DNA of 64,000 bases from Gekko japonicus (GCF_001447785.1 NW_015173122.1:1437541-1501540), one strand, 5' to 3'. Shown: positions 11,001 through 61,468, counted from the stretch's first letter. Program-made: numbers and translations. The notes: generated by a model from the letters alone, not told the origin.

Positions 11001-14000
11001 ATCTGTTTTCCTGTTTCTGTACGTGCAAGTCCCAGCCTCACCTCCCGGTGGGTGGGTGGGGGCAGAGTGTGTATAAAATAAACTATTGCTGCCTTGAAAG
11101 GCAGACAGATTTCTCTGCCCTCAAGAGAGCTGTCTCGTGTGATTCCTTCACTTCTGAGTAGTGAAGGGCGGGATATAAATCCAATCTCTTTTTCTTCTTC
11201 TTCTTACCCATCTTGAAACCCTTCTCTCCTTATAACTGTTTAAGCAATACTTGAAAATGTGTCACTTCTTTCAAGCTTCTGGCCTCTAAACTCTGAAGCC
11301 AACCTTCTCCTCTCCCTCCACTCCCCTTTGCACCCCTTTCTGGCTGGTAAGCCTGCAGGCTATTTGTCCTTTGAATAGATGTTCAGACATGACACCACCG
11401 CCACCATCAAATAAACCCCAGTCTAAATAAGACACGGCCATACTTATTGCACCTGATACCTTCCCTTCCCTGGCCAAAATTTCTGATCCGTGATGCCATC
11501 CCGGCCGGAGGAGGAGGAGAAGAGATTTGATTTATACCCCGCCCTTCACTACCCAAAGGATTCTCAGAGCGGCTTACAAACTCCTTTCCCTTCCCCTCCC
11601 CACAACAGACGCCCTGTGAGGTAGGTAGGGCTGAGAGAGCCCTGACAGAAACTGATCTTTTTCAAGAACAGCCGTGCCAGAACTATGGCTTGCCCAAGGT
11701 CATCCAGCAGCTGCAAGTGGAGGAGTGGGGAATTAAACCCGGTTTTCCAAGATTAGAGTCAGCGCACTTAACCACTACACCAAACTGGAATCAACTCTAA
11801 GAGCAAAACTAGACATGATTGCTTCCTTGTGGCTGCCACAAGGCCACCGCTGCCACTTTTAAGTGATCTGAAATTGCTGCAAGAACCCATTCGTAATTCA
11901 GTCCAAAGGACAGGCCCCCCCATACCCAGTTTGGTGGAGTGGTTAAGTGCGCGGACTCTAATCTGGGAGAACCGGGTTTGATTCCCCACTCCTCCACTTG
12001 CACCTGGCTGGATGACCTTGGGCAAACCGTAGTTCTGATAAGAGATGTTATTCAAAAAGATCAGTTTCTGTCAAGAGCTCTCTCAGCCCCACCTACCTCA
12101 CAGGGTGTCTGTTGTGGGGAGGGGAGGGGAAAGGGGTTTGTAAGCCGCTCTGAGACACCTTTTGGTAGTGAAGGGCGGGGGATAAATCCAGTCTCTTCTT
12201 ATTCTTTCTGAGTGTCAAAACCACAGGGTGAACAAGGGTGCAAGGGAGAGCAAGATCGGGCCCTCATAACCTCTTTAAATCACTTTGAAATGGCAGCAGT
12301 GTCCCTACAGCAGCCACAAGTGTCCCTGTGCCATGTCAAGTAAACCCTCAGGAACAGCCCTGCAAGGGTCCTACTTGGCTGCCACCTAGGCAACTCCCCC
12401 CTCCCCCTGCCTGTAGCTGAAACAAGCCCTGCACCTCTTTTTCTGGCCAGGAATGGCCTCAGGACTCACCATCTTCCGCAGGGGCTTGCTGCGAACTGCC
12501 ATGCCGTCCATGTAGTCCTCCAACTTGAACTGGTATGATACTTGCAGCTTCTGCAGCAGGCCATCGAAGAAAAGTGTGCCCTGTGAAGGGGAGAAAGGCG
12601 TCAGGAAGAGAGGGAGACTCTCTGCACCTAGTTCAAGCGCCCCTGGTGGGTGATTAGTGTCCAAGACAGCCACGAGCATCTCCAGCTCAAAGGTCCTTAA
12701 TGCTCCTGATTTTTTGGGGGGTGGGTGGGATCAGAAGGCAGACCACTAACCAATTTACAGAGGACCGCTTCACCTCCGTTAAGATTCATGCCAAGAACAC
12801 TACTGTCGATCTGATCCGGCAAGGCACCTCTTACATCGTTCAGCATGAATGACAACATTCGCATGTTGAACTATTGACTGCCAAAAGAACCTGAACATGC
12901 TGTCTTGGTTTATACATCTGTAGAGAAATACATTGTCTCCTGGAAGGCTGGCAATGAGCAAGGCCTTCACGGTACAGTTTAACCATTTTTTCCCCTCTGA
13001 ACTAGGAACAAGCAGGAGGGGGAGGAAATTAGCCCATGGCCTTCCAGGCGCATTTCTTAAGATATGTTAATAGATCTAGCAGGAGAGACAACAGGGTGGG
13101 CCAGTTCTCCCTCCCTCCTCCTACCAGGGAACAGAGATTTGGAAGATTAGAATGCTAGATAATCTCCAGGGATATTCCCCAAGAAGGGGCTGGGAGAAAT
13201 ACTTCTCTGAACTGGCCTGACCAGGTCAAGTTGGAGGGACAAAGAGAGATAATAAAACTTCCTTGCCACCGAAAGTAGGCTCTCTTTCTTTGGGGTGCTG
13301 TGTGGAGGGGAACTCAGCTCTGGTCTGCAAGCAGGGAGCCACTGACCACATGGTCTCCTGGGAGAGTTGGAGCAAGCTTTGAGGTAATAGCAACTTTGTA
13401 GAGATTTTAACTAGCTATGCTTAAAAATCCTATAGAATCATAGAATCACAGAGTTGGATGAGACCTCCAGGGCCATCTAGTCCAACCCCCTGCACAATGC
13501 AGGAAATTCACAAATACCTCCCCCCCCTCCACATCCACAGTGACCCCTGTTCCATCTGTCCTATTTTAGCAGCTGGTAGGGCATGCGGTGGCTCAAGTGG
13601 TTAAGACGCTGAACTGCAGGCTGTGGAAGGTCAGTAGTTCAGCAGTTCAAGACCCGGGTGCCGCAAAACGGAGTGAGCTCCCGTCTCTAGTTCCAGCTCC
13701 TGCCAACCTAGCAGTTCGAAAGCAAGAAATTGCAAGTAGATAAATAGGGATCACTTCGGTGGGAAGGTAACAGCGTTCCGTGCGCCTTGGTGTTTAGTCA
13801 TGCCGGCCACATGACCACGGAAATGTCTTCGGACAGCGCTGGCTCTTCGGCTTTGAAACGGAGATGAGCACCGCAACCCTAGAGTCGGATTCGACTGGCT
13901 TTCGAGCAAGGGAACCTTTACCTTTACCTTAGGGCATGTATAAAGAGAGGGACAGAAGATTTCCACTTTTTACCAATTTCTTTTCTATCCCTTGCTCAAA

Positions 14001-23520: not shown

Positions 23521-23720
23521 GGATGGGTTGCTGCTGCGAGATTCGTCAGTAGTTCAGCAGCTCGAGACCCAAGTGTGCCGCATGACGGAGTGAGCTCCCG
23601 TCTCTAGTTCCAGTTCCTGCCAACCTAGCAGTTCGAAAGCAAGAAATTGCAAGTAGATAAATAGGTACCACTTCAGTGGGAAGGTAACAGCATTCCGTGC
23701 ACCTCAGCATAAATGCCGGC

Positions 23721-26047
23721 TGGGATGTACTAAAAGGAAGGACAGGATTGCCCATTGGAAACAATGGGAGACGCTGGAAGGCCCATTGGAAATACTGGGA
23801 GCCAGGAATGCAAATTGCCAATTGACTTCCATGGGCTCCATTGGAAAACATTAGAGTATAAGTAGAGTTCCAATAAAAATGCAGAATGGATTTTACATTA
23901 GGGTCTCTGGGCCCATAGACTACTCTGGGAATGGAATGAGAGACCACGGAGTGCAATGACAGCCCCTGGGAGCAACAGAAGTGTTCAGGCATTGGAATGA
24001 CAGGCCACAGAGTGGAATGACAGCCCCAGGGTGCAGCAGGAGTGTTCTGGAACTGGGATAACAAGACCAAGAGTGGATAGACAGCCCCAGGGTGGAGCAG
24101 GAGTGTTCTGGAACTGGGATGACAGGCCACAGAGTGGACAGACAGCCCCAGGGTGGAGCAGGAGTGTTCTGGAACTGGGATGACAACTCCAGGGTGGAGC
24201 AGGAGTGTTCTGGAACTGGGATGACAGGACCAAGAGTGGATAGACAGCCCCAGGGGGGAGCAGGAGTGTTCTGGAACTGGGATGACAGGCCACAGAGTGG
24301 ACAGACAGCCCCAGGGTGGACCAGGAGTGTTCAGGAACTGGGATAACAAGACCAAGAGTGGATAGACAGCCCCAGGGTGGAGCAGGAGTGTTCTGGAACT
24401 GGGATGACAGGCCACAGAGTGGACAGACAGCCCCAGGGTGGAGCAGGACTGTTCATGGACTGGGATGACAGGCCACAGAGTGGAATGACAGCCCCAGGGT
24501 GGACCAGGAGTGTTCAGGAACTAGGACGACAGGCCACGGAGGGCATGACAGCCCCAGGATGCTGCAGGAGTGTTCTGGAACTGGGAACTCCGTGGCCTGT
24601 CATCCCTGTTACAGAACACTCCTGGTACACCCTGGGGCTGTCATTCCAATCCGTGGCCTGTCATTCCAGTTCCTGAACACTCCTGCTCCAACCTGGGGCT
24701 GTCATTCGACTCCTTGGCCTGTCATCCCAGTCCATGAACACTCCTGCTCCACCCTGGGGCTGTCATTGCACTCCGTGGCCTGTCATTCCAGTTCCTGAAC
24801 ACTCCTGGTCCACCCTGGGGCTGTCATTGCACTCCGTGGCCTGTCATTCCAGTTCCTGAACACTCCTGGTCCACCCTGGGGCTGTCATTGCACTCCGTGG
24901 CCTGTCATTCCAGTTCCTGAACACTCCTGGTCCACCCTGGGGCTGTCATTGCACTCCGTGGCCTGTCATTCCAGTTCCTGAACACTCCTGTTCCCCCCTG
25001 GGGCTGTCATTCCGCTCCGTGGCCTGTCAACCCAGTGGCTGAGCACTGCTGCTCCACCGTGGGGCTGTCATTCCATTCCGTAGCCTGTCATCCCAGTTCC
25101 AGAACTCTCCTGCTCCACCCTGGGGCTGTCTATCCACTCTTGGTCCTGTTATCCCAGTTACAGAACTCTCCTGCTCCACCCTGGGGCCGTCATTCCACTC
25201 CGTGGCCTGTCATCCTAGTTCCAGAACACTCCTGCTCCACCCTGGGGCTGTCATTCCATTCCGTAGCCTGTCATCCCAGTTCCAGAACACTTCTGCTCCA
25301 CCCAGGGGCCGTCATTCCACTCCGTGGCCTGTCATCCTAGTTCCAGAACACTCCTGCTCCACCCTGGGGCTGTCATTCCATTCCGTAGCCTGTCATCCCA
25401 GTTCCAGAACACTTCTGCTCCACCCAGGGGCCGTCATTCCACTCCGTGGCCTGTCATCCTAGTTCCAGAACACTCCTGCTCCACCCTGGGGCTGTCATTC
25501 CATTCCGTAGCCTGTCATCCCAGTTCCAGAACACTTCTGCTCCACCCAGGGGCCGTCATTCCACTCCGTGGCCTGTCATCCTAGTTCCAGAACACTCCTG
25601 CTCCACCCTGGGGCTGTCATTCCATTCCGTAGCCTGTCATCCCAGTTCCAGAACACTTCTGCTCCACCCAGGGGCCGTCATTCCACTCCGTGGCCTGTCA
25701 TCCTAGTTCCAGAACACTCCTGCTCCACCCTGGGGCTGTCATTCCATTCCGTAGCCTGTCATCCCAGTTCCAGAACACTTCTGCTCCACCCAGGGGCCGT
25801 CATTCCACTCCGTGGCCTGTCATCCTAGTTCCAGAACACTCCTGCTCCACCCTGGGGCTGTCATTGCACTCCGTGGTCTCTCATACCATATTTCTATTGC
25901 AACTCTACTTGTACCCTAATGGTTTCCAATAGAGCCCATGCAAGTCAATTGGCATTCTTGGTTCCCATTATTTCCAATGGGCCTTCAAGTCTCTCCCATT
26001 GCTTCCAATGGGCAGTCCTGTCCTGTCCTTCCTTTTAGTACATTCCA
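23721..26047. mobile_element. Non-autonomous foldback DNA transposon with long TIRs and inverted 61-bp tandem arrays
   Basis: Termini TGGGATGTACTAAAAGGAAGGACAGG / CCTGTCCTTCCTTTTAGTACATTCCA; about 160-bp unique TIR; TSD TGCCGGC/TGCCAGC. Confidence 0.88.
23940..25880. repeat. 61-bp minisatellite in two head-to-head arrays (inversion point about 24586), with a 122-bp higher-order repeat
   Basis: Unit CACTCCGTGGCCTGTCATCCTAGTTCCAGAACACTCCTGCTCCACCCTGGGGCTGTCATTC; identical ORFs recur every 122 bp from 25202 to 25690. Confidence 0.95.
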
Positions 26048-26508
26048 TGCCAGCAACATGACCACGGAAATGTCTTCGGACAGCGCTGGCTCTTCGGCTT
26101 TGAAACGGAGATGACTCCTAGCTTTCGACTGGCTTTCGAGCAAGGGAACTGGCTTTTGAGCAAGGGAACCTTTACCTCCCGTCGCGGAACAGCAGGGAGC
26201 CTGGCTCCAGCATGTCCCTTGTTCCCCCTTCCCCCGGGGAGGGGGGAGAAGATCGAAGAGAGATTCTAACACAAAGCAGGCACATGAGTAATTTTTATTC
26301 ATTGAACAGGTGTTAAGGCAGCTGCACGAGGGACCCAGACCCTCAGAAGCACTGAACGTGAAGGAAAGAAAGGGACTTCTCCCCCCCACCCCCAGCTCTT
26401 CCAAGGGCAGAAGGTATAAGGCTCTAGCCCCCCTTAGGACTGCCAGACAACAACACTTCTTTCAAGCTTCCCTTCCTGATAAAAGGTGCAAATGAAGCCA
26501 GACTCCTT

Positions 26509-26678
26509 CTAGTCCATTTCCTCCCTTTCACAAAGGGTGCTCTCCCCAATCCTGCTCAGTCCTGGAACATGGGGCTCATATATCCATTTGGGGAAGACCC
26601 GCTTGTAGAGGGTCATCAGCACTGTGTCCTGGGACTTCAGCTGCCCGTCAAACTGGCATTTCATCAGGCCGTGGGTAC
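26509..26678 (-). CDS. TSR1: TSR1 exon 15 (last coding exon)
   Basis: [32 protein letters not shown]...EEMD*. Confidence 0.93.
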
Positions 26679-29600
26679 CTGGCAACAGAGGAGAGAAGTT
26701 ATAAACTGCCTGCCCAGTAACCCGGGGGTGGGGGGGAGAGATCTACTAGCCAGTTTGGTGTAGTGGTTAAGTGCGCGGACTCTAATCTGGGAGAACCGGG
26801 TTTGATTCCCCACTCCTCCGCTTGCACCTGACTGGATGACCTTGGGCAAGCCATAACTCTGGCACAGCTGTTCTTGAAAAAGAGCAGTTTCTGTCGAGCT
26901 CTCTCAGCCCCACCTGCCTCACAGGGTGTCTGTTGTGGGGAGGGGAAGGGAAAGGAGTTTGTAAGCCGTTCTGAGACACCTTTGGGTATTGAAGGGCAGG
27001 GTATAAATCCAATCTCCTCTTCTTCTTAAATCCACACCATTGGCCTCAATCCACTTACCCACAGGCTCTTTGATGTGCCCCCGCCGACCCCACTTGGTCC
27101 GGAGTGCTACTGGCTTAAACCACGACACGTCCTCTGTAGGCAGAGAGAAAAGAATGAGAGGGAAGCAGCTAACGCGCACATCACTAGGCACTGCCACGTG
27201 CCTGCCCCATTAGTGCATTCCAGAAGGCAGCTCTTCATGCCGTCCAGCTGCACAGGCTGTATACATGCCTGCATGAACAGAATCCGTTTCAGGGAGTAAC
27301 TTCATCCTTTCTGCAATCTACAGAGCCCCAGCACTTCTTCCAGAAAAGATAATAATGCTAAGAAATCTTGCTTTGTCATCAGCTTACCCAACCCCATAGG
27401 TACTCTCCCACCAGGACCCCACACTCCCGTGAACCACTGAAGGGTTGCATGAAGTTTCATTAGCATTATGCTAAAAGAACTGGCATTTTACTCCACAACT
27501 ACCTCTCAAAGGGGTGACAGGCTGGTGGGGGTGGATGGGGGTGGGGGGATGGATCTTGCTTCCACTGCTGCTTGAGGTCCATCAAGAGCAGCAAATGGTC
27601 GCACCCTGCCTGCTGACCAAAAGAGACTAAGACCTGTACCTCTGTTGAAGAACATGTAGCGCACAACAGCCATCTTCCTGTGGATCTTGAAAGGGTGGCC
27701 ACTGAGCACCACCCGCTTGAGGGTCACCCTGCTGGGGTCAACGCTGTGGAGAGAACCCGTGGCCAGGAGGTCATGTGATCCTAAGGAGAAAAACAGACGC
27801 TGCTAGAAAGTCATTTGACCAGCAGCAGGCTAGATCAGGGTGTTGCCTTTAGGTCCAGGTAGTCACCCTTTGTTCACTGCATGTGCAAGCTACTTTTTCG
27901 GCAGGCCCTTCGACATGGAAAGAGAGGTAGAACTAGCCAGCTACAATGCATGTTGTGAGTTCAAAAATTTCCCAGCCCAAATACGAAAGCAATTTTATAG
28001 AAGCTGAGGAATGATCAACTTTTTTGGCCCAAGGTACTGAAAATTGCAGTCTCTATCAGGTGAGAGTCTACGCCAGGGGAAAAAAAACTGATGGGGAGAG
28101 ACTGGTTGGATACACCTGGAAGCATGCCAAGTCACAGCAGCAAGATTTGCTGCCAGGGTCTCAGTTGGGTGGGTCCTGAGTGCCAAGCAAAATGGTTTGA
28201 TGTGCTGTTGCTGGCACAGACCAGGAGCCACCTAGTCCTCCTGTAGAAGATGCCAACACCACCAATAAAGGGAGGTACAAGCTTTGGTAACAAACAATGA
28301 CATGACAGACAGGCTTGTCTGGGGAGACTGTTCCACAGAATACCACCACTGAAAACACCCTGCTTTCTCTCACACACACACACACACACCCCACCAATGG
28401 ATCTGTTCAGTCATTAACAAAGGGAACACAGAGCTGAGTTCCACTGGACCACATAATGAGAAGGGAGGCTCCAGTAAAAGGCTCTCCTAGAAGTCTGCCA
28501 CAACCAGCAGCACAGTGATTACATTACACCCTCAAAAGAAGACCAGGGAGACACACTAGCTCCCCTGCACACACCCCTTTTTACTTCTTCAGCTGCCCCA
28601 TGAATTAATCGCAACTGGCCTCAGGTCATCTAGTACACTGGCCCCTCCACCATATGGGCTTTCAGTCCTCTGGCTTTGCAGCATGCTAAAGTCAGGAACG
28701 GTAATATCACCCTGTGGGAAAAGCCAAGCCTCAAATGTTCCTGACTCACCGTCACTCCTCTGCTTGAACAGCAACACGGAAGCTGGTGGGAAAGTGATGG
28801 GGCCATACATGGTAGCCATGGTGGGACCATCAGCTGGTAGAAACCGCACCAGCTTGTGCTTGGATGCTAAGGGAAGAAAATGACCTGTTTAGACCCTGCA
28901 GCCATCCTGCAAGCCGGAGCCCCCTTCTGAGAGCTTCAGGAAAGGGCTGTAAGAACGCTTGCACAGGTGGCCTTCAGTCAAACACACTGTGTTTGAGCGG
29001 CTTCTCCAGTGGCAGTGCAAACATGCCTTCAGCCACTGCCTTTGCTTCCAGACCATAATTCCTGACAGGCCAGCCTCCTATTCCTTTTTTTAAATTATTA
29101 TTATTATTATTGAAGTTTATATACATAATCTTACATTAAACCATTGTACAATCATTTTACCCCGCTCCCCCCTCCCTCCTTTATAGTATCTTCATATTTT
29201 TAACCATGTGCACAGATTCTTCATTCGTATTTGGATATTTGGATTGGCTTCCCCCCTTTCCACCCATTCCTTATATCCCACCCATTTATTTGTAATCTTT
29301 TGACATTTCTCCTCCCATGTCTCTTCAGTAGCCAGCCTCCTATTCCTGGAGCTGAAGTAGACCAAGCAGTCCGTTATGCCCTCAGACAGAGGTTCCCTCC
29401 TAGTCCTGCTACCCTATGACTAGAGATACCAAAGATCACGTCTGTGATCTTCGGCATTCTATGAGCTACAGGCCCTTTTATCACAGACACATTTCCCCTC
29501 CCTCCTAACTGCAGAGGCCTCCAACCAGAATCTTGGGCTACAGAGCAAAAGCTCCCCCACCTGAGCTGTGCTGGGAATAAAGTGGCGAGGTCTGGAAGCG

Positions 29601-35600: not shown

Positions 35601-38600
35601 TCGGAAGCAGAAGGGGTCAGACGGCCGAACTGGGGGTGTTTTCCCTTTAAGAACGGCCTGGCAGAGAAACGGCATTTTTTTCTCCAGTGTTAAGTGAATG
35701 ACTGCCTTCCCAGAGCAGCACACTTGATTTGTGCCATGCCTCCAAGTTGGTTCGTCACAGGTCGTGCTTCTCCCTTGCTTTGTGCTCTCCTCGCCTCTAA
35801 AGCCCCCCCAGACAGCAATCGCAGCCACCTGACGACCTGCACACATTCTCGCCAGGCAGCCCTGAAACCAGCAGTTGTTTTCATCCACCAGTTCTGTTAC
35901 CTGGGAGATGGCCTCTTCCATAGATGTCTCTTCCTCCATCCCATTTGCCTCATCAAGCTCTTCGTCATCACTGCCGCTCTCACCTTCTCTCTCATCTACA
36001 ATCCAGGTAGCCTGGTAGGCAGAAGTGCCTTTGGGGACCCTCCTGGAGATCTTCTTGGTCTGCTTGAGGGATTCTAAAGGGGTATGGGGAAAGGCCAGTC
36101 AATATCAAACACAGAACACTCACCCATCAGGGCCAAGCCTCCTCTTTAACAGCAAAGAAGCAGAGCTAAGCCCTGGACCTACAGCATGGTAGGCTGCGTT
36201 CCCAAAAGGATGCAATACAAGTAGACATCCACAGACTTAAATGCCAGATCCAGAAGAATACTAATGCCTTGCATGGCACATGTATTGCTTCCACTTGCTA
36301 TCGGGAAGCCTTGGGGGAGAGTTGGGGGAGACACACACACAGACACCATGTCCCCAAATAGCACAGAGTTGGCCAAAACAGAAAAGGGAAGAGAACAGAG
36401 AAGGGTCATCCCTCCCAGCCACCCAGACTTCACCTGCTGCCTCACTCAGCTCTTCTTCGGTGGGCCAAGTCTGCTCTCCATCCATGGGATCAGGGACAAT
36501 CTCTGACTGCAGCGACTCCTGCTTGCTAGGATCAGCCCTCATTAAGACCTGCACATCTTCCTCCATCTCAGCCACTTTGCTGAAAGTGTTGTCCTAGGAA
36601 GCAAGAGACAGAAGCACCAGTGTTGCCACTCGTGGGCCAGAGGAAGGACTTTTCTAACTCACTGTTGGTGGCAGTTCTCCTCTGAACTTTCAGACACCTA
36701 ACTCCTCCCTCGGTCACAGCCTCCCAGCAAGGGAACAGAACCCACCCGTACCTGCACACCTTTGCCTCTTCTAGGTTGCCCTTTAGCAGCTCTCAGGTTC
36801 TGTCCAAATGGCTCTGGGGTGGCATCCACCTGGCTCATCTGAAAGTCCCCGTGGCCCACGATATGCACCAAACGGTTTACGTTCAGGCTCCGCCCTCTCA
36901 CGTAGCCAGACACTTTCAGAGTCCCCACCAAAGCACTGCCTGGCCCAGGAACAAATTCCACAGCTTCAGCCAGCAGGTGCGCTCGCCGGTCCCGGAATGC
37001 CAGGTGCCGCTGTTTCTGGGTGGCGAGGTGATGCAGCAGGAGCACAGACTCCTGCTCTGTGTTGAGGGGGAAGAGCTTGGCCTCGGGGAACCTCTTCTCA
37101 GTAATCTTCCTCAGTTTTTTCTGCAAGTCAATTTGCTTCTTCAGCGGTTGGTCAGCAAGACCTTGAACAGCAAGGCCTACAGGCAGCACAAAGGAGACAA
37201 GTTTGAGCCTTGACAAAGCAGCACTGAAGCCAAGGACACCTCGGTATGGCAGAAAATGCCCACAAAAGCTAACACTCTCACAGTGCTCCTTAGAAGTCCA
37301 CTACCTTCCCTTCTAATCATTCTGCATAAGACAACCAGTATAAAACAAGAACAGTCATGTTAGATCAGACCAAGTACTGCATGTAGCCTCTTGCTTTTAT
37401 TCCAGACGAGCCAAATTGGAAGTGCATAAACTGGTCTACTCTGTCTTCACTGTTTGGTGTTCAGAGCTATAGTGCCTCTGAATATGTTAGTTTTATTTAG
37501 CACTATTGGTGTAGAGCCAGCAATAGGCCTACTCCTCATAAAGGCCACTAACAAGTCTTTGGAGCTTTCCCAATTTGTCATAACTGCCCATCAAAAAGTC
37601 TACGCTGCAGGTGTTCTTCCTGGTCATCAAGGCTGACCCACCCTATTACATGCTACAAGCAATCCATGTTAACCAAAGCTCGCTAACCAATAAACTGGGA
37701 GGAGGGTTTTTTGGCTACACTCACCATAGCTGGGGAGCCCCTGTGCAAAGATGCAGGAAAGGCAGTAGTTGCCAACAGCATCCCAGCCTTCAAGTGGATC
37801 CAGCACAAAAAGAAGGGTGTCAGCGACTTTAGCGAGGTCCAGAACAGCAAAAAGGTTCCCTAGAGAAATAAAAAATGCACTAATGATTGAGCATACCCCA
37901 AGTATGTCTGTGAACAGCTGAAACGGTCTTTGAAGGCATCCTCACCTCTGTCAGCTACCACAAATTGCCATCGCAACTTAGATCGCGGGCACAGCAAGAC
38001 AAAACCCGGAAGACCCCTCTCGGCCTGGTGCACAACAGAAGCCTCGCTGCTCTGAAACTGCCGCAAGACACTTTGGCTGTCAACATTAGCGTGTAGTGGG
38101 ACCACAGCCACCAGGTGTGGTGGCGCATCCTTGTGGCCTAAGTTTCGCTTCTCTGCCAGCACCTGCGATCACAAGGAGAGAGAAAAAATGAGTCCTCTTC
38201 GCCCTTCCTCAAAGCAGCTTTAGCTCCCCTTGCCTTCTGTGCCCATGGCTAAGCTCACCGCCTCCTTGGACCGCTGACGGAGCTGCAGTGCCCGATGCTT
38301 GCGATCCAACTTGGCCAAGTTGCGGCGCTTTTGAGAGCTGAGAGTTTTGACAGACACCCCAACTAGGGAAGAAATAAAGCAGCTCAATACAGACTTATGC
38401 TGAACCAGAATATACATGTGCAGGCACACATTTGAAGACAGAAAATGCCATTTCAAAGCCATACAACTTTTCTGCCTTTTCCCCAAAAGGACTATTGAGA
38501 GACTTCACAGAACTACTGAACATGCTTGCATAACTGGGGCCCATGTCAGTCTGATGACCCTCTTCGTGAGTCTAAAAGCCCTTTACAAAACTTGATTGCA

Positions 38601-39799
38601 AGTTAGACAGGGAAACCTCCTTTTAGAGAAAGGGGGTGGGGGAGCAGCTTCATCGCTGTACCAAACTGAAAACCCCCCTGCCCCCGATCTTCTAGACACT
38701 CATAAAGTTGGGGCCACCGTTTTTTTTCATTTTGTTAGGCAAAATTTCTTTTTGTGGGACACCCATTATGCTTATAAAAAGAATAAATAACTGGGGATTT
38801 TGAGAATGGAGCCTGAGGAGCATGGGGTTTGGGGAGGGACTTCAATGGGATATAAGGCCATAGAGTCCACCTGGAGATCAGGTGTAATGCCAGGGGATCT
38901 CCAGCAACCACCTGGAGATTGGCAATCCCAGGAGAGAGAGATTGGCTTCCCCCACCATCAACCCCCCTGCGATGGAAAGTTATGGGGGAGAGAGAGAGAT
39001 GGACTTCCCCACCACCATCACCATGCATTCTCTCTCTCTTTCCTTACTCAGCCCCCCCTCCTGGTTTCATTCCTGGAGGAACAGCTGATAAGTGTGGCTC
39101 AAGTGGTTAAGACGCTGAACTGCTGACCGGAAGGTCAGAAGTTCAGCAGTTTGAGACCTGAGTGCCGCATGACGGAGTGAGCTCCTATCTCTGGTTCCAG
39201 CTCCTGCCAACCTAGCAGTTCGAAAGCAAGAAATTGCAAGTAGGTAAATAGGTACCGCTTTGGTGGGAAGGGAACAGCGTTCCGTGCGCCTTGGCGTTTA
39301 GTCATGCCGGCCACATGACCACGGAAACGTCTTCGGACAGCGCTGGCTCTTCGGCTTGGAAACGGAGATGAGCACCGCAACCGTAGAATCGGACTCGACT
39401 GGCTTTCGAGCAAGGGAACCTTTACCTTTAAGAGGGGACTGATATTGACCAAAAGCAACAGGGCAGCTTTCCTTTCGTTCCCCAGCATCCCGGCAGCGGT
39501 GGAGCACCCGTTATGCTTGGCGCCAACCGTGGTCCGTCTTTGCCACCCTCCGGGCCTCGACTAGCTCTGCACGGAGAGGCCCCATCATCTCCCCCCCTTC
39601 AGCGGCCCCAGCCTTCCCCCGGGAAAGGAGAAGCGAGAAGACACCGCTTGCACGCCCCACACATACACCCCACGGCGCGCTCACCGGCATGCCTTCGGGC
39701 GCTGTTCCGGCGGTGCCTGCCAGCTTTGTGCGGTTTGTTCTGCTGCTTCAGAGCCCCGGCCCGGTGGGCGCCGGCGCCGCCCGCCTTCGGGACAGCCAT
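26509..39799 (-). CDS. TSR1: TSR1 pre-40S ribosome maturation factor, complete 15-exon CDS
   Basis: Exons 39685-39799, 38259-38362, 37946-38162, 37725-37859, 36752-37176, 36434-36593, 35901-36073, 34839-35029, 30767-30929, 29922-30032, 29561-29693, 28750-28866, 27640-27780, 27059-27133, 26509-26678; GT-AG and in phase. Motifs [79 protein letters not shown]. Stop at 26509-26511; AATAAA at 26294-26299. Confidence 0.97.
26748..27027 (+). mobile_element. tRNA-derived SINE in TSR1 intron 14
   Basis: Same family as 11926. Confidence 0.88.
27059..27133 (-). CDS. TSR1: TSR1 exon 14
   Basis: [25 protein letters not shown]. Confidence 0.94.
27640..27780 (-). CDS. TSR1: TSR1 exon 13
   Basis: [27 protein letters not shown]. 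Confidence 0.94.
28750..28866 (-). CDS. TSR1: TSR1 exon 12
   Basis: KHKLVRFL...[16 protein letters not shown]. Confidence 0.94.
29086..29330 (-). mobile_element. 5'-truncated L1/Tx1-like 3' end
   Basis: A-rich tail on the minus strand; 17-bp TSD GCCAGCCTCCTATTCCT at 29069 and 29331. Confidence 0.7.
29561..29693 (-). CDS. TSR1: TSR1 exon 11
   Basis: [10 protein letters not shown]...[16 protein letters not shown]. Confidence 0.94.
29773..29856 (-). ncRNA. SNORD91: Box C/D snoRNA SNORD91 (HBII-296 family) in TSR1 intron 10
   Basis: Minus strand reads GGGGAAGCCA-GTGATGA (box C)...GTCTGAACCTGT (guide)-CCGA (D')...TGACGA (C')...CTGA (box D)-GGTTCCCC. Terminal stem GGGGAA/TTCCCC; box D about 87 nt from the 3' splice site. 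The guide matches recalled SNORD91, whose mammalian host is TSR1. Confidence 0.88.
29922..30032 (-). CDS. TSR1: TSR1 exon 10
   Basis: [16 protein letters not shown]...LLPYEQK. Confidence 0.94.
30767..30929 (-). CDS. TSR1: TSR1 exon 9
   Basis: [32 protein letters not shown]. Confidence 0.94.
31345..32052 (-). mobile_element. RTE-X-like LINE 3' fragment
   Basis: [13 protein letters not shown]...[15 protein letters not shown]...[10 protein letters not shown] zinc-knuckle; TSD AGCCAGGATACA. Confidence 0.7.
32221..32453 (-). mobile_element. 5S rRNA-derived SINE (SINE3)
   Basis: Head ATCTCGTCAGATCTCAGAAGCTAAGCAGGGTCG matches 5S; 15-bp TSD AAAGTAGTCCATCTC. Confidence 0.85.
32772..33634. mobile_element. 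AT-rich palindromic MITE (about 130-bp arms) interrupted by a Helitron
   Basis: 32772-32817 plus 33355-33440 is the reverse complement of about 33503-33634. Confidence 0.8.
32818..33354 (+). mobile_element. Non-autonomous Helitron
   Basis: 5' TCTATATATCTAA; 3' hairpin CCCGCGA-TTT-TCGCGGG about 12 nt before CTTG (CTRR variant); inserted at A|T with no TSD. Confidence 0.8.
33815..34150 (-). mobile_element. L2 LINE 3' fragment
   Basis: APTWWN-type region similar to the L2 at 7050-7200. Confidence 0.7.
34170..34630 (-). mobile_element. RTE-X-like fragment
   Basis: [15 protein letters not shown]...GEIDSIEHV; (ATTG)n tail. Confidence 0.65.
34839..35029 (-). CDS. TSR1: TSR1 exon 8
   Basis: [28 protein letters not shown]. 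Confidence 0.93.
35338..35686 (-). mobile_element. Possible solo LTR
   Basis: TGGA...TCCA ends; AATAAA on the minus strand near 35540; TSD weak (GCGC/GTGT). Confidence 0.4.
35901..36073 (-). CDS. TSR1: TSR1 exon 7
   Basis: [17 protein letters not shown] followed by an acidic tract. Confidence 0.92.
36434..36593 (-). CDS. TSR1: TSR1 exon 6
   Basis: [34 protein letters not shown]. Confidence 0.93.
36752..37176 (-). CDS. TSR1: TSR1 exon 5
   Basis: [11 protein letters not shown]...[30 protein letters not shown]. Confidence 0.93.
37725..37859 (-). CDS. TSR1: TSR1 exon 4
   Basis: [22 protein letters not shown]...CLSCIFAQG. Confidence 0.93.
37946..38162 (-). CDS. TSR1: TSR1 exon 3
   Basis: [24 protein letters not shown]. 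Confidence 0.93.
38259..38362 (-). CDS. TSR1: TSR1 exon 2
   Basis: [31 protein letters not shown]. Confidence 0.92.
39085..39430 (+). mobile_element. Sauria SINE in TSR1 intron 1
   Basis: Near-identical to the 13578 copy. Confidence 0.9.
39685..39799 (-). CDS. TSR1: TSR1 exon 1
   Basis: [30 protein letters not shown]. Confidence 0.92.
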
Positions 39800-39960
39800 G
39801 CTTCGCTCACAGGCCTTGCCTACACTTCCGGGTCACGAACCGGAAGGAGCCGCTGAACGCGGCAGGTGGTCCCGCGGGCGGAATTTCCTAGCGGCTCAGG
39901 CCACCCCTTGGCTGCCTCTTCGTTCGCGCCCTGAAAAGCAGGTGGAGCGGGGCACTGAGT
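39800..39960 (-). promoter_or_regulatory. TSR1 CpG promoter with paired ETS/GABPA sites
   Basis: ACTTCCGG-gtcacga-ACCGGAAG at about 39824-39847, just upstream of the ATG. Confidence 0.65.
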
Positions 39961-40527
39961 GGCAGAGCGGCCTTATGTAGTCCGGCCAGACGGCCCCAGA
40001 AAGGCCACAAGCAGGGCAAGGAGGCCGAAGCTGAAGACTTTGGCAGCCCCGGCATGGACGCCTCGCCCTCACATCCCCTCGGTGTGTGTGCGGGGGTTGC
40101 CCTCCAACCTCTCTGCGCTGCCCCAGCTCCAACTGCCAGGTGGGACCTGTAGATCTCCCGAAATGATAACTGGTCTTCAGACTAGAGATCAGCTCCCTTG
40201 TAGAAGATTGCAGCTTCTGAAGGCAAACTTTATGGTATTCTAGTACCCCAGTGAGGTCCATCCACAGGTTGCACCCCCATATCTCCGGGAATTCCCTAAC
40301 CGGGAGTTGGCAACCTTACACACAGTCCTGCTCTCCTTTTGCTCCCCTCAGGTGGCTCCCTCTTTTCAATCTTGTTGCTGCTACTTCAGTCTAGAATTCC
40401 TTCACAGGAGATCTATACCATTTATGTTGAATTCCTCCTCAAACACCACCTTATCCATGAAGTCCCCTCATGAAATGAAACCTAACGATTCATGTAACAG
40501 AATTCATGCTCTCCCACCTCATGTGAC

Positions 40528-40731
40528 CAATGCTCCCTCTAAGCTGTGGAGTCTTGTGAGCAAAAATTCTACCTTGTGAGTTACTGGCATTAAAGAGAGC
40601 GAGTGATTTGGCTGCTGCATACATTAGTTTGCTCTGGAGCCCTCCTTCCTGAGCTAAGACAAAAATGTGTGAGCTGGGAGGCTAAAAAACTGTGAGCTAG
40701 CTCACACTAACGCAGCTTAGAGGGAACACTG
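40528..40731 (-). mobile_element. hAT MITE, same family
   Basis: TIRs plus TSD CATGTGAC/CATGTGAA. Confidence 0.88.
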
Positions 40732-40741
40732 CATGTGAAAC

Positions 40742-41685
40742 ACATATAAAGTTGCCTTATACTAAATCAGACCCTTGATTCATGTCAGTATAATCTACTC
40801 AGGCTGCGGTCACACGGAGCATTAGCCACGCTACAGAGACGGAAGATAGGCGGATTTTCCGGGCGCGATCACACCGCAACATCCGGGAAGCGTATAGCTC
40901 CCGTGGCGACCCCGAGGCTTCCCGCCGAAGATGTGGCTTAAAAAAATAGTACCTCCGAGGTACTAGTTTCCGGAAACCGCGGGGCAAGGGCGGGCATCAG
41001 ATCGTGTTTCCGGTTCACACTTTTTTGTCTCAGCTCAGGAAGGGGTGTGGCTCCACAGCAAACTGATTGATGCAGCAGCCAAATGGCTCGCTCACCACTT
41101 TAATGCCAGGAGGCAGGAGCTCACCGGATTTTTGCTCACAAGACTCTGCAACGTAGAGGGCGCATTGGTGGCCACCCTAGGACGGCCATGGCTTGGCACG
41201 ACGACGCTCCCTATCTCCCGCGGTGCATGGCTTACTTCTAAGGAGACCTGGGGGGGGGGGCCTTTGCTCGGCCTGTTCGAAAGGAACTCTCTGCACCGGG
41301 CGGCAGAGGGGGAGGTGCAGGGGGGGGCGTGGAGGGAGGGCGGCCCGGCTGAAGCTCCTCCTGGAGGGGACCAGACGGAGGACACAGTTTGCATTCCTCT
41401 GCAGCAGGAAGGGGTTAAACCCGTGTGATTGGCACCTCCCCCCTAAGCACGGGACCTCGCCGGGACGTCTGATTGCGCAGCGTGCGTTATTTTGCTCCGG
41501 GGCAAACAGCCACGCTCCCCCCCCCCGCGCATTTTCCGGCCCGTGGGACCAGAGCCTCAGGCTGGCAGTGGCTCTCAAGGGTCTTTCACATTACCTACTG
41601 CTTGGTCCTTTTTAACTGGAGACCCTGGGGATTGAACCAGTGTACTTCTGCATGCAGAACAGATGTATTACCACTGAGCCACACC
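40742..41685 (-). mobile_element. Squam3-like tRNA SINE interrupted by a Harbinger MITE
   Basis: Halves ...TAATCTACTCA|GGCTGGCAGTGGCTCTC...; tRNA head GGGGATTGAACC...CCACTGAGCCAC. Confidence 0.7.
40802..41556. mobile_element. PIF/Harbinger-type non-autonomous element
   Basis: TIRs GGCTGCGGTCACACGG / CCGTGGGACCAGAGCC; 3-bp TSD TCA; contains a partial hAT MITE at about 41013-41167. Confidence 0.78.
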
Positions 41686-41881
41686 ATACAGGAATTTAAA
41701 GCTACCTCAGGCCAGTGAGAGCAGCCAGTATCTCCATTCACACCCGAGGACCTCCTTCACACATGTTTTAGATTCAGCATATGAGAGATGTCTCTGAAAA
41801 GCACTTGCACATTGGCACACCACAAAGAAAGAAATGGAATGAAGCCTTCAACACATGTTCACAGAATCCGTTTTCTTATCA

Positions 41882-41943
41882 CAGTGGCCAAACCATACCT
41901 GTTCTTCAATCAGTGGCCAAACCATACCTGTTCTTCAATCAGT
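41882..41943 (+). repeat. 29-bp tandem duplication
   Basis: CAGTGGCCAAACCATACCTGTTCTTCAAT x2. Confidence 0.9.
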
Positions 41944-43597
41944 TCAATCTGGTGGTCAGAGGAATCCGTAATATCAAGGCACGCAGGTTACTTCAACCAC
42001 ATTTATTGAAAGCGATCTTTTTTACAGTTATTTACATTATGAAGCCAGACTCTGCAAAAACCTCAGAGCTCCAATGTACTGTACGAGGGCTTGCCCCTTC
42101 CAGGGAAAATGGCCCACAAGAAGCATCTGAGAAAGCAACATACTCCCAGACCCACTCCCAAAGAGCCCTTCCCCATAGCTTTCCTTCTACAAATGCTCCC
42201 CCATTCCCACTGCTACCTTGCTCAATGACCAGAAACAAGATTAAGGAGAACACTTTCCCAGATGTGTAGTGTGCTACTCTTCCAATTCTGAAACCCAGCT
42301 TGTTTGGTGGTTCTTTGTTTTTTAAGGGCTACTGGCAGACACAGCAGCAGAGTGGAAACCTGGGGCGGAGGAACAGTGTTGCTACAGCCAACTTGCACCA
42401 CTGGGCAACGCCCTTGCCTGTTACAGCCACTTTGGCATTTGCAGTAGCTGCAACAGAATCAACAAAGAAACAGCTACATTGTTGGAGGTATCTGAATTGG
42501 ACTGCTTGAAAAAATATGTAATCTGGTAAGGAAAGGACTAGCTGAAGGCGCTCATCTCTTGCAAACCCAGCTCATCTGGCTCTCTGCTTACTTAGAGGCC
42601 AAACCACTGCTTGTGTTGTGAGCATCTTCTGTCTTTGCATCTTAAAGCAACTGCCCTTCCCCTAGATGGCACCATCCTGCCTTTTCCAGGAACCCACCAA
42701 ACGGGTGAGAGGGAAACAGTAACTCTGCACCTAGGGAGAGAACTCTGCCTTAGCAGCAAGACACTGTGCAACAGCAAACTGCCCCACACACATTGTATTC
42801 CAGTTTGTCTTAATCTCAACTCCTGCCTTATGTATTAAACTCCAAGTTATGCCCTATCTAAGGAGGCAAAAGCCAGTGAATGGACTGATACAACACTGAG
42901 ACAGGAGATGCCACACACTGACCCAGAGCTACCAAAGCAAGTGGCCCAGAGCTACCAAAGCAAGGTCAGGAGCTGACAGGGCCAGTCACTCTGGAAAAGA
43001 ACCAACCGTCAATATTCCAGCAGGAGGAACAACCCACCCAAAGTACCAGGGGACAACAGGCAAACACCCAACCAGGGGACAACAGCTAAAGTACCAGATG
43101 GGATGGAGCGGGGGGAGGGGAGTATTTCCCCACTCCTATCGCCCCGCCCCCCCGCCTCCAGCTTTGTGATGTGAGACAACTTCTGCCAGAGTGGGAGGAA
43201 GCTAGGAATGTTTTGGGACTAGGAAGGAAAATTGTCCTACAGCTGGGGAGGATGTCTTCTGGGGGGGGGGGGGGAGGATCACATTCCCAATGGTTCACAG
43301 CCAGCAGACCTTTAGGGGCTCTGTCAGCAGCAGCCTGGTTGACTAGGTACCCCAGCTTGCACTCTTACAGAGGTACTAAAAGGTGCAAAAAGGGTTAATG
43401 GTGCCAAGTAGCCCCAGTGGGTCAGATTTAAACGCTCCCAATGCTTCACCTCCCCACCCGGCCCATTCATCTCTCAGCAGCTGGTCAAAGAAAAAAAAAC
43501 AAGGGGAGGGGAGAATCAAAATGTTTTTAAAAACAATCCATTTCAGCCTTTGAAAGGGGGTGGGTGTCCTAGGGTGTCTGGTTTCCTGAGGATTGCT

Positions 43598-43712
43598 CTA
43601 CCAGTGGAGACCAGAAGGAGGCGTCTTCTCATCCTTGTTGCTTTCCAGAGAGAAGGGTGGGATTCGGACATCGAAGTGAGAGCCATCGGGCCGTTCAAAG
43701 CGGAAAGTGCCC
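43598..43712 (-). CDS. POLDIP2: POLDIP2 exon 11
   Basis: GTFRFERPDGSHFDVRIPPFSLESNKDEKTPPSGLHW*. Confidence 0.95.
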
Positions 43713-60400: not shown

Positions 60401-61468
60401 TCTCAGAAATTGTATCTGTAATTTTTAAATAGGATAATGAATCAGAAATCGCATGTATGTATTTCTGTTTTGATTTCATTTACATAGGCAAGTATATTTT
60501 GTGTCACAGTGATTCTTTCATATGCACTCATTTCAAGAATAATTAGATTGATTTTAAATAAAAATCTTAAGATAAACCTGAGTGATCTTTGGCTGGGATA
60601 CAAGTTTTTCACTTGACACCTGGAAATAAACTTCTGACCTTTTCAGACAGAGGGCTATAATAATAGAGATTGGGCATCAAAGAGAGTAGCCATCTCAGTA
60701 TGGCCCAGTGATTTAGTGGTTAAGGCATCACTTTGGAACAGGCAAAGAAACCCTTCATTTCCATGTGTTTTAAAAGGCATGCTTCCCTTAGTTGGGGGGG
60801 AGGGGGACACAGTTCACCTGTTGCAGGCTAGTTGCAGTGCCAGCAAAAGTATCTTGATAGTTGTTCACAGCTTTCGGAAGATAAAAGTGTTACTCTTTGA
60901 GGATTTGCAGGGGTGATGTTGGGCTGGTAGGCTCCCATCCTGTGTCTCCCTTCCCCAGTTAGGTCCACTAAAGCTGTGGTCGTCACCATATTCAACTTCC
61001 TTGTGACTGTGGGAGCAACATTTGCCTGCACCTATCTGGGCAGCCAGTATATCTTTACAGAAATGGCAGCGGTGAGTGATGATGCGGGGGGGGGGGGGGT
61101 GATGGGGGGGGGGGGGGGGGGGGTGATGCACGAGCACCTTTTTATTGCCAGTAATTTCTACCCACAAAGCTCAGAAATCCTGTAATGTCCCCGCTGAGTC
61201 TCATTTCTATAAATAAAAGAGAAACTGACATAGATGCTGAGCGATGGGGCATGTGCTTCTTTGACAGCTTGCAAAAGCCAGGCATACTCTCTGTGCCGGG
61301 CCAGAGCTGTGACTGTGGCTCGCCCAGTGGAAATGCACAAGGCAGAACTGACTCGTCTTCCCTCTTTNNNNNNNNNNNNNNNNNNNNNNNNNNNNNNNNT
61401 CAGTGGTGGGTTTGGCAGAGCTATACGTGATGGTGAGGACTCTGGAAGGGGAACTTGGAGAGCTGTGA
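54278..61468 (+). CDS. TMEM199: TMEM199 (Vma12 homologue, V-ATPase assembly factor), 6 exons
   Basis: Exons 54278-54446, 56546-56619, 56831-56920, 57999-58041, 60959-61071, about 61373-61468 (start in N gap). Motifs [21 protein letters not shown]...[37 protein letters not shown]...LGEL*. AATAAA at 61991. Confidence 0.95.
55090..56172 (+). mobile_element. Degenerate L2 LINE 3' part
   Basis: [12 protein letters not shown]...[11 protein letters not shown]...APSLWNSLP; ATAA tail. Confidence 0.8.
56546..56619 (+). CDS. TMEM199: TMEM199 exon 2
   Basis: [24 protein letters not shown]. Confidence 0.93.
56831..56920 (+). CDS. TMEM199: TMEM199 exon 3
   Basis: [30 protein letters not shown]. Confidence 0.94.
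57119..57594. mobile_element. hAT (Charlie-like) MITE
   Basis: CAGGGGTGTCAAAC / GTTCAACACCCCTG; TSD CACTAGTT. Confidence 0.88.
57999..58041 (+). CDS. TMEM199: TMEM199 exon 4
   Basis: [14 protein letters not shown]; pyrimidine tract plus TAG acceptor, GT donor. Confidence 0.88.
59305..59633 (-). mobile_element. Sauria SINE inside a CR1 fragment (about 59040-59935)
   Basis: Reverse complement of the 13578 family; TSD GCTTCTTT. Confidence 0.88.
60959..61071 (+). CDS. TMEM199: TMEM199 exon 5
   Basis: [38 protein letters not shown]. Confidence 0.93.
61368..61399. other. 32-N gap
   Basis: Run of N overlapping the TMEM199 exon 6 acceptor. Confidence 0.99.
61373..61468 (+). CDS. TMEM199: TMEM199 exon 6 (5' end inferred within N gap)
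   Basis: After the gap: [22 protein letters not shown]. Confidence 0.85.
   Translation, partial: XXXXXXXXXSVVGLAELYVMVRTLEGELGEL

What the first reader, a model, noticed from the sequence alone, without database searches (positions are those of the whole stretch)
23721..26047. 2.3-kb foldback transposon: TG..CA TIRs, 7-bp TSD, head-to-head 61-bp arrays
Seen: the element splits a Sauria SINE whose halves rejoin cleanly, which fixes the boundaries. It is flanked by TGCCGGC/TGCCAGC. About 160 bp of unique TIR with repeated CCATTGGAAA motifs leads into tandem 61-bp units, and the two arrays meet inverted at about 24586 with no spacer. Almost the whole element is therefore a palindrome, with no transposase. 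Established: long TIRs with internal tandem repeats define foldback elements (Drosophila FB; Galileo, a P-superfamily element with 7-bp TSDs), whereas typical hAT elements make 8-bp TSDs. Inference: this may be an uncharacterised squamate foldback family mobilised in trans. I cannot assign the TG..CA plus 7-bp TSD combination to a superfamily with confidence.
Basis: partly seen in the sequence, partly recalled or inferred. Interest (0 to 1): 0.8.

Follow-up and report, generated by a model that had tools for sequence, protein, structure and literature searches.

The report
Gecko foldback transposon inside a SINE
A 2.3-kb non-coding "foldback" jumping gene, one old copy of a family present several hundred times in this gecko-type genome, sits inside a SINE; it is real and tidy, but it is a known kind of element, and the enzyme family that moves it could not be settled.

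Summary
The described structure is there. Window 23721-26047 is bounded by inverted ends of about 160-230 bp that are 90% alike. It is filled by two opposed 61-bp arrays, about 11 units on the left and 21 on the right, which meet at 24586/24587 around a 16-nt loop. It has no coding capacity. It interrupts a high-copy SINE, and three intact SINE copies in the window carry the target sequence only once.

Raw reads at about 1x depth cover the right end 600-1,300-fold. That points to a few hundred elements. Contigs of two related species also hold the end sequence.

The SINE does not fix the boundaries to the base. It reads CA before TGCCGGC, so target duplications of 7, 8 or 9 bp all fit this copy. 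Three weak lines favour 7 bp with TG..CA ends, at roughly 70%:
- the symmetry of the two ends;
- one foreign contig that aligns exactly to 26047;
- the terminal heptamer TGGRATG, which recurs 37 times in the arrays.

The arms are not mirror images unit by unit. The right arm holds five identical 122-bp dimers, so the arrays grew after insertion.

The best reading is a non-autonomous foldback-type cut-and-paste transposon, Galileo-like in shape, with its superfamily unproven. This scan had already noted foldback elements on other DNA of this genome (23 notes). No long-read check of the centre was possible.

The parts
23545..23713 (+). Left part of the interrupted high-copy SINE
   Evidence: Aligns with three other SINE copies in the window (13630-13923, 39134-39419, 59307-59588 reverse) and continues across the junction.
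23714..23720 (.). Left target-site duplication, TGCCGGC in the 7-bp register. The 8-bp register starts at 23713. The 9-bp register is 23713-23721.
   Evidence: Intact SINE copies carry ATGCCGGCC once. The consensus of 36,950 SINE reads with a loose end at 26046 reads ...GTTTAGT before CATGCC.
23721..23949 (+). Left inverted end, the unique outer domain. It starts TGGGATGTAC and carries the subterminal motif CCATTGGAA at 23752, 23783 and 23838. The first of these is a 7-bp palindrome around GAAA.
   Evidence: It carries about 50 extra bases (about 23866-23915) relative to the right end.
23950..24586 (+). Left 61-bp array of 11 units. One unit is cut to 41 bp and the last to 48 bp.
   Evidence: TRF; monomer map.
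24587..24602 (.). Centre of the palindrome: a 16-nt unpaired loop that is the remainder of the innermost right-arm monomer.
   Evidence: Monomer map; DNA fold of 24287-24886.
24587..25870 (-). Right 61-bp array of 21 units, in the opposite orientation to the left array.
   Evidence: TRF gives 21.3 copies with 89% matches; monomer map.
25200..25809 (-). Five identical 122-bp dimers (units R02-R11), a post-insertion local amplification.
   Evidence: R02=R04=R06=R08=R10 and R03=R05=R07=R09=R11. At period 122, 486 of 488 bases are identical over 25260-25869.
24773..24955 (-). Three identical 61-bp units (R16-R18), a second local amplification.
25871..26047 (-). Right inverted end, the unique outer domain. 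Its reverse complement starts TGGAATGTAC. The CCATTGGAA motif lies on the minus strand at 26003-26011 and 25972-25980, and a one-mismatch copy lies near 25925.
   Evidence: Read depth is 630-1,270 against about 1 on unique flank. The family's majority letter differs from this copy at 25894, 25922, 25923, 25958, 25962 and 26002.
26048..26054 (.). Right target-site duplication, TGCCAGC. It has one mismatch to the left copy, a CpG-type G>A change.
26055..26183 (+). Right part of the interrupted SINE
   Evidence: Read depth is about 36,000-44,000.

Best explanation
Window 23721-26047 is one old copy of a non-autonomous, foldback-type cut-and-paste DNA transposon.

Each arm has an outer unique domain of about 160-230 bp. 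That domain starts with TGGRATGTAC and carries two or three subterminal CCATTGGAA(A) sites. Behind it lies a tandem array of 61-bp units. The two arms face each other and meet with no middle domain.

The element inserted into a SINE and duplicated a short target, most likely the 7 bp TGCCGGC. It encodes nothing, so a transposase made elsewhere must have moved it (inferred). That transposase would recognise the terminal heptamer and the subterminal sites. The heptamer TGGRATG is repeated twice in every 61-bp unit, so the arrays probably act as banks of secondary binding sites, as was shown for Galileo (inferred by analogy).

After insertion the two arrays evolved separately by slippage or unequal exchange. 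Evidence: different unit numbers, different unit order, blocks of identical units, and a CpG lost throughout the left array only.

The superfamily is not established. A 7-bp duplication with long, internally repetitive ends is closest to Galileo and 1360 of the P superfamily.
For: - Inverted ends, arrays and hairpin.
- Insertion into a SINE with a duplicated target: plus the SINE-read loose-end consensus.
- No coding capacity. No known RNA family.
- Multi-copy family: raw reads (X21, about 1.1x on unique flank) give depths of 629, 1,268 and 882 over the three 50-bp bins of the right end. That is roughly 570-1,150 ends, or about 300-600 elements.
- The end also lies in contigs of organisms B and C in unrelated flanks. 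X5 record 16 aligns up to exactly 26047 and then runs on for 168 unrelated letters.
- At six places in the right end the reads' majority letter differs from this copy, and at several of them it agrees with the left arm. So a family consensus exists and this copy has drifted from it.
- The terminal heptamer TGGRATG occurs 11 times in the left arm and 26 times in the right arm, always in arm orientation. That is 16 per kb against about 0.2 per kb outside.
- Independent array turnover.
- Literature: unequal repeat numbers in the two TIRs, and secondary transposase sites in such repeats, are documented for Galileo (PMC3573991, PMC3688188). Galileo and 1360 make 7-bp duplications (PMC3698922).
Against: - Only one copy could be read base by base. 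The duplication can equally be written as 8 bp (ATGCCGGC/ATGCCAGC) or 9 bp (ATGCCGGCT/ATGCCAGCA, with ends GGG..CCC), because the SINE has CA in front of TGCCGGC.
- No autonomous copy, transposase or excision (empty) site was seen.
- The ends start TG..CA, which from my own knowledge is not the usual CA..TG of P-superfamily ends.
- The depth estimate counts everything at least 80% alike, and its baseline rests on about ten reads.
- The centre and the blocks of identical units were not checked against long reads.
Confidence: 0.8

Rival explanations
1. It is a Mutator/Foldback-superfamily element, like Drosophila FB, Tetris or Tm1. The duplication is 9 bp, ATGCCGGCC in the original SINE, and the element runs 23722-26046 with GGG..CCC-type ends.
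For: - The 9-bp register exists: ATGCCGGCT on the left and ATGCCAGCA on the right, 7 of 9 matching, against a SINE consensus of ATGCCGGCC.
- Foldback families with tandem-repeat TIRs and 8-10 bp duplications are assigned to Mutator (PMC3169594, PMC4079207).
- Unchecked notes of this scan report several foldback elements with 9-bp duplications in this genome.
Against: - The ninth base would have to have changed in both copies (T on the left, A on the right, C in the consensus).
- The T at 23721 and the A at 26047 are complementary, as expected of terminal inverted bases.
- A foreign contig aligns through 26047.
- T precedes GGRATG in 37 of 47 internal copies of the terminal motif.
- My rough combined odds are about 10:1 against, after allowing a prior in its favour.
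Confidence: 0.1
2. It is a non-autonomous hAT element with an 8-bp duplication (ATGCCGGC/ATGCCAGC) that picked up and expanded an internal satellite.
For: - The 8-bp register fits this copy as well as the 7-bp one.
- hAT is the most abundant and most structurally diverse DNA-transposon superfamily in the one lizard studied in detail (PMC3014272).
Against: - The ends would be unequal by one base: T GGGATG... on the left against GGAATG... on the right.
- The termini do not fit the hAT YARNG pattern (established knowledge, not a tool result).
- The arrays are part of the inverted ends on both sides and are not a central cargo.
- A foreign contig aligns through 26047.
Confidence: 0.08
3. The element is real, but its centre and array lengths are partly an assembly product: a collapsed or chimeric junction at 24586/24587, with the blocks of identical units created by consensus polishing.
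For: - Long palindromes and identical tandem units are hard to assemble.
- Five dimers are 100% identical while neighbouring units differ by 5-15%.
- No run that could span the centre was available. All runs listed were short-read contigs or 100-nt reads.
Against: - Both arrays are joined to their own unique end through the same transition sequence and in the orientation that an inverted repeat requires. The opposed orientation is therefore a property of the element and not of one junction.
- Reads show array-to-array joints of 61 bp, as expected of real arrays.
- Foldback elements without a middle domain are well known.
Confidence: 0.1
4. It is not a transposon. It is a local palindromic duplication of a satellite block that happens to lie in a SINE.
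For: Palindromic amplification of tandem arrays does occur.
Against: - The unique ends are present hundreds of times in the genome and also in other species, in other flanks.
- The target is duplicated and the SINE rejoins.
- There is no other copy of the units or the ends anywhere nearby in 64 kb.
Confidence: 0.02

Closest known systems
Galileo (with Kepler and Newton) of Drosophila, P superfamily
   Same: - Long, internally repetitive inverted ends.
- Most copies consist of the two ends only.
- The two ends of a copy can hold different numbers of tandem repeats.
- The duplication is 7 bp.
- The repeats carry secondary transposase-binding sites (PMC3573991, PMC3688188, PMC3698922).
   Different: - The host is a gecko and not a fly.
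- The repeat unit is 61 bp against about 210 bp.
- No THAP-type transposase copy is known for this family.
- The ends start TG..CA.
- The 7-bp duplication here is only the favoured reading of a single copy.
Drosophila FB, Tetris (D. virilis) and Tm1 (root-knot nematodes): Mutator/Foldback elements
   Same: - The arm layout matches: an outer flanking domain, then tandem repeats.
- There is little or no middle domain, and the copies are non-coding.
- The repeats appear to derive from part of the outer end.
- The arrays can expand (PMC4079207, PMC3169594).
   Different: Those families make duplications of 8-10 bp, mostly 9. Here 9 bp is possible but disfavoured. No MULE-type transposase was seen.
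Non-autonomous hAT families of lizards (Anolis survey)
   Same: They are non-coding, trans-mobilised DNA transposons of very diverse structure, abundant in squamates (PMC3014272).
   Different: That survey found no P, Mutator or foldback elements. The termini here are not hAT-like, and the whole body is an inverted repeat.
Dada transposons (6-7 bp duplications)
   Same: The duplication length overlaps, and the target lies in a small-RNA-derived repeat.
   Different: Dada elements have no terminal inverted repeats and hit one fixed site in small RNA genes (PMC3706591). This element has long inverted ends.

Membership tests
Foldback-type transposons (structural class) | Long terminal inverted repeats that make up most of the element and contain tandem repeats | tested here: met
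   The arms are 866 and 1,461 bp of a 2,327-bp element, with 61-bp arrays of 11 and 21 units.
Foldback-type transposons (structural class) | Flanked by a target-site duplication and present as a dispersed multi-copy family | tested here: met
   The target is duplicated in a SINE that carries it once elsewhere. End depth is about 600-1,300x against about 1x, and copies lie in other flanks and other species.
Mutator/Foldback superfamily (FB, Tetris, Tm1) | Target duplication of 8-10 bp, mostly 9 | tested here: inconclusive
   A 9-bp register with 7 of 9 matches exists but needs extra coincidences. The 7-bp register is favoured.
Mutator/Foldback superfamily (FB, Tetris, Tm1) | An autonomous copy encoding a MULE-type transposase | not testable with these tools
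   No other copy of the family could be fetched.
P superfamily (Galileo / 1360 type) | 7-bp target duplication | tested here: inconclusive
   TGCCGGC/TGCCAGC gives symmetric TG..CA ends, which makes 7 bp the favoured register at roughly 70%. It rests on a single copy, and 8 or 9 bp are not excluded.
P superfamily (Galileo / 1360 type) | An autonomous copy encoding a THAP-domain P-type transposase, with THAP sites in the ends | not testable with these tools
   No autonomous copy could be reached. The repeated CCATTGGAA and TGGRATG motifs are only candidate binding sites.
hAT superfamily | 8-bp target duplication | tested here: inconclusive
   ATGCCGGC/ATGCCAGC fits, but it leaves ends that are unequal by one base.
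hAT superfamily | Termini of the YARNG type | tested here: not met
   The ends read TGGGA and TGGAA. The YARNG pattern itself is from established knowledge and not from a tool.
Dada superfamily | No terminal inverted repeats; a fixed target in small RNA genes | tested here: not met
   Long inverted ends are present. The Dada features are taken from PMC3706591.

The most novel reading that the evidence does not exclude
The family is a Galileo-like, P-superfamily foldback transposon that amplified to several hundred copies in geckos. It would have a 7-bp duplication and TGGRATG and CCATTGGAA transposase sites multiplied by the arrays. That would be an amplified P-type family in an amniote, a group in which (from my own knowledge) P-type genes are known mainly as domesticated THAP9-type genes. 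The one detailed lizard survey found no P or Mutator elements (PMC3014272).
Probability: 0.2. Interest if true: 0.6.

Novelty: new member of a known kind. Interest (0 to 1): 0.35.

Why it matters
Foldback elements are well studied in flies, nematodes and plants. There they seed satellite DNA and cause inversions and fragile sites. I found no paper describing them in geckos or lizards, and the only detailed lizard survey lists neither P nor Mutator elements.

A family of a few hundred long palindromes in a gecko genome would be:
- a source of hairpin-prone, recombination-prone DNA;
- a source of new tandem repeats, since this copy shows arrays growing in place;
- a possible marker for a DNA-transposon superfamily not yet recorded in squamates.

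The value lies in the family and not in this copy. The scan has already met other foldback-type elements in this genome, so this copy adds one more family, or family member, with a possibly different duplication length (7 bp).

Tried and rejected
- Other copies in the window: none. The terminal 21-mer occurs only at the two ends, and neither ends nor units match anything else in 64 kb.
- Other copies elsewhere: exact-pattern scans of metagenome contigs and prokaryote genome contigs found nothing, as expected for lizard DNA.
- Reads: I laid reads only on the right end and flank (25828-27300), because the tool turns away stretches with a long repeat. I therefore did not send the arrays or the palindrome centre, and the centre is unverified.
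- The loose-end table was swamped by SINE reads. The family's own end positions were not listed, so the decisive last-base test gave only one usable contig.
- A THAP-type core (TxxGGGx[A/T], recalled from memory) was looked for by eye in the subterminal motifs and was not present. I give this no weight.
- Origin of the 61-bp unit from a SINE: rejected, no similarity.
- Known RNA families: none.
- Coding capacity: none.
- Dada was considered because of its 6-7 bp duplications and rejected because it lacks inverted ends.

Full report
**Observation.** The outer 229 bp on the left (23721-23949) align with the reverse complement of the outer 177 bp on the right (25871-26047). They match at 155 of 172 aligned positions (90.1%, K2P 0.107), with three indel events, one of about 50 bp present only on the left. 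A 21-nt terminal word occurs exactly twice in 64 kb, once at each end on opposite strands, where chance predicts none. Tandem Repeats Finder reports 61-bp arrays at 23924-24586 and at 24587-25888 (21.3 copies, 89% matches), and they lie in opposite orientation. The central 600 nt fold as a single DNA hairpin of -309 kcal/mol against -114 +/- 5 for shuffles (z = -39). The 16-nt loop at 24587-24602 is simply the rest of the innermost right-arm unit. The only ORFs are artefacts of the repeats and match no Pfam family. No Rfam family matches.

**The host SINE and the boundaries.** The flanks belong to a SINE with three other copies in the window. The rejoined flanks align across the junction at 78-84%. 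Intact copies read ...TTTAGTC ATGCCGGC CACATGACC, with the target present once. In this copy, ATGCCGGC lies to the left of the element and TGCCAGC to the right.

The SINE has CA in front of TGCCGGC and the element ends ...CCA. In the read data, 36,950 SINE reads begin to match at 26046. Three registers therefore fit:
- 7 bp: TGCCGGC/TGCCAGC, with ends TG..CA.
- 8 bp: ATGCCGGC/ATGCCAGC, with ends unequal by one base.
- 9 bp: ATGCCGGCT/ATGCCAGCA, with ends GGG..CCC.

I favour 7 bp, at roughly 70%, for four reasons:
- The T at 23721 and the A at 26047 are complementary, as terminal inverted bases should be.
- The 9-bp register needs the ninth base to have changed in both copies away from the SINE's C.
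- A contig from another species that carries a different copy aligns exactly up to 26047 and then runs on for 168 unrelated letters (X5 record 16).
- The terminal heptamer TGGRATG, including its T, recurs 11 times in the left arm and 26 times in the right arm, always in arm orientation. That is 16 per kb against about 0.2 per kb outside the element.

Each argument is worth only about 3-4 fold. None replaces a table of many copies.

**Internal anatomy.** Read from the outside inwards, each arm has four parts:
- the terminus, TGGGATGTAC on the left and TGGAATGTAC on the right;
- two or three subterminal CCATTGGAA(A) sites;
- a common transition sequence;
- the 61-bp units.

The first subterminal site forms a 7-bp palindrome around GAAA. 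At 26002 the reads' majority letter restores that form in the right arm too. Each 61-bp unit is itself made of three degenerate sub-repeats of about 20 bp.

The arms are not mirror images unit by unit. The left has 11 units, with one cut to 41 bp and the last to 48 bp. The right has 21. Units R02-R11 are five identical 122-bp dimers, and R16-R18 are three identical units. The left array has lost a CpG (CACGG to CACAG) in almost every unit, while the right array keeps it. Mean identity is 0.855 within the left array, 0.892 within the right and 0.844 between them. So the arrays turned over independently after the arms separated, and parts of the right arm expanded recently.

**Family evidence.** Only the right end and its flank were laid against reads (25828-27300), because the tool refuses stretches with a long repeat. 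In raw 100-nt reads of the same species (X21), unique flank has a depth of about 1.1. The three 50-bp bins of the end have 629, 1,268 and 882, and the one array unit included has about 2,650. That means roughly 570-1,150 ends at least 80% alike, or about 300-600 two-ended elements. The baseline rests on about ten reads, and related families may be counted.

The unit-to-end depth ratio is only about 2-4. This copy's 11 and 21 units would then be well above the family average, which agrees with local expansion. Partial alignment of array reads makes this rough.

At 25894, 25922, 25923, 25958, 25962 and 26002 the reads' majority letter differs from this copy. At several of these places it agrees with the left arm, so the copy has drifted from a family consensus. 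Contigs of two other species hold the end sequence in other contexts. Their unique flanks differ from the window by about 5% (organism B) and about 8% (organism C).

**What it is and how it works.** The best reading is a non-autonomous foldback-type cut-and-paste transposon.
- Shown: inverted ends, arrays, a duplicated target in a SINE, no coding capacity, a multi-copy family, and independent array turnover.
- Inferred: mobilisation in trans by a transposase encoded elsewhere; recognition of the terminal heptamer and the subterminal sites; and the arrays acting as banks of secondary binding sites.

The last point rests on analogy with Galileo. There, THAP-domain binding sites were demonstrated within the long, internally repetitive ends (PMC3688188), and the two ends of one copy often hold different repeat numbers (PMC3573991).

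**Comparison with known families.** In shape this is a classic foldback element. In Tetris the arms have an outer flanking domain followed by tandem repeats thought to derive from it, with duplications of 8-10 bp and a suggested Mutator affinity (PMC4079207). Tm1 has tandem-repeat ends and 9-bp duplications (PMC3169594). Galileo and 1360 of the P superfamily make 7-bp duplications, and P itself makes 8 bp (PMC3698922).

With a 7-bp duplication the closest match is Galileo/1360. Membership cannot be claimed, because there is no transposase, the duplication comes from a single copy, and TG..CA ends are not what I recall for P-type ends. hAT fits only in the 8-bp register and fails on termini. 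Dada makes 6-7 bp duplications but lacks inverted ends (PMC3706591).

**Novelty.** The Anolis survey found hAT, Tc1/Mariner, Helitron, Chapaev, PIF/Harbinger and Polinton, but no P, Mutator or foldback elements (PMC3014272). My searches found no paper on foldback transposons in geckos or lizards. Dfam and Repbase could not be consulted.

The scan's own notes are unchecked. They list 23 foldback-type findings on other DNA of this genome, several with 9-bp duplications. One follow-up reports a family of several hundred copies, and one title reads 'Galileo-like P candidate'. They also identify the genome as gecko-like.

I therefore rate this a new member of a known kind, of moderate interest. The open and testable point is whether a 7-bp (P-like) foldback family coexists with 9-bp (Mutator-like) ones in this genome.

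**Limits.**
- No other copy could be read base by base.
- The palindrome centre and the identical blocks were not checked with long reads. None were offered, and the arrays could not be sent to the read tool.
- The orthologous locus in the related species was not resolved. A contig of organism B stops matching exactly at the SINE's 3' edge, 26184 (X4 record 10). That could mean the SINE and its nested element are absent there, but the left flank was outside the stretch laid.

Noticed in passing
window 26729-27027: A tRNA-headed SINE (about 26748-27027, ending in a TCT-rich tail) is by far the most abundant repeat in the reads, at a depth of up to about 125,000. It is missing from the orthologous contigs of organisms B and C, which join 26728 to 27025 with about 13 other letters between. 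It is therefore a lineage-specific, young insertion (X4 record 11 and X5 record 17).
   Followed up: partly
window 26184 (3' edge of the host SINE): A 795-nt contig of organism B matches 26184-26393 and then runs on for 576 letters that do not match the SINE's right half or the element's end. The host SINE, and the foldback nested in it, may be absent at this locus in organism B. The left flank was not in the stretch laid, so this is untested (X4 record 10).
   Followed up: no
window 23700-23713: Just 5' of the left target duplication, this SINE copy reads CAGCATAA where three other copies and the read consensus have TGGTGTTTAGTC. That is 4 bases shorter with about 6 substitutions, much more change than in the rest of the SINE. 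It could be a subfamily difference or damage linked to the insertion.
   Followed up: no
window 13630-13923, 39134-39419, 59307-59588 (reverse): Three further copies of the host SINE, 78-84% identical to the interrupted one. Read depth suggests tens of thousands of copies in the genome.
   Followed up: partly
window 26128-26169: A 20-bp unit (ACTGGCTTTCGAGCAAGGGA) is duplicated in tandem in the tail of this SINE copy. The other three copies have it once.
   Followed up: no
window 61368-61399: A run of 32 N, either an assembly gap or masked.
   Followed up: no
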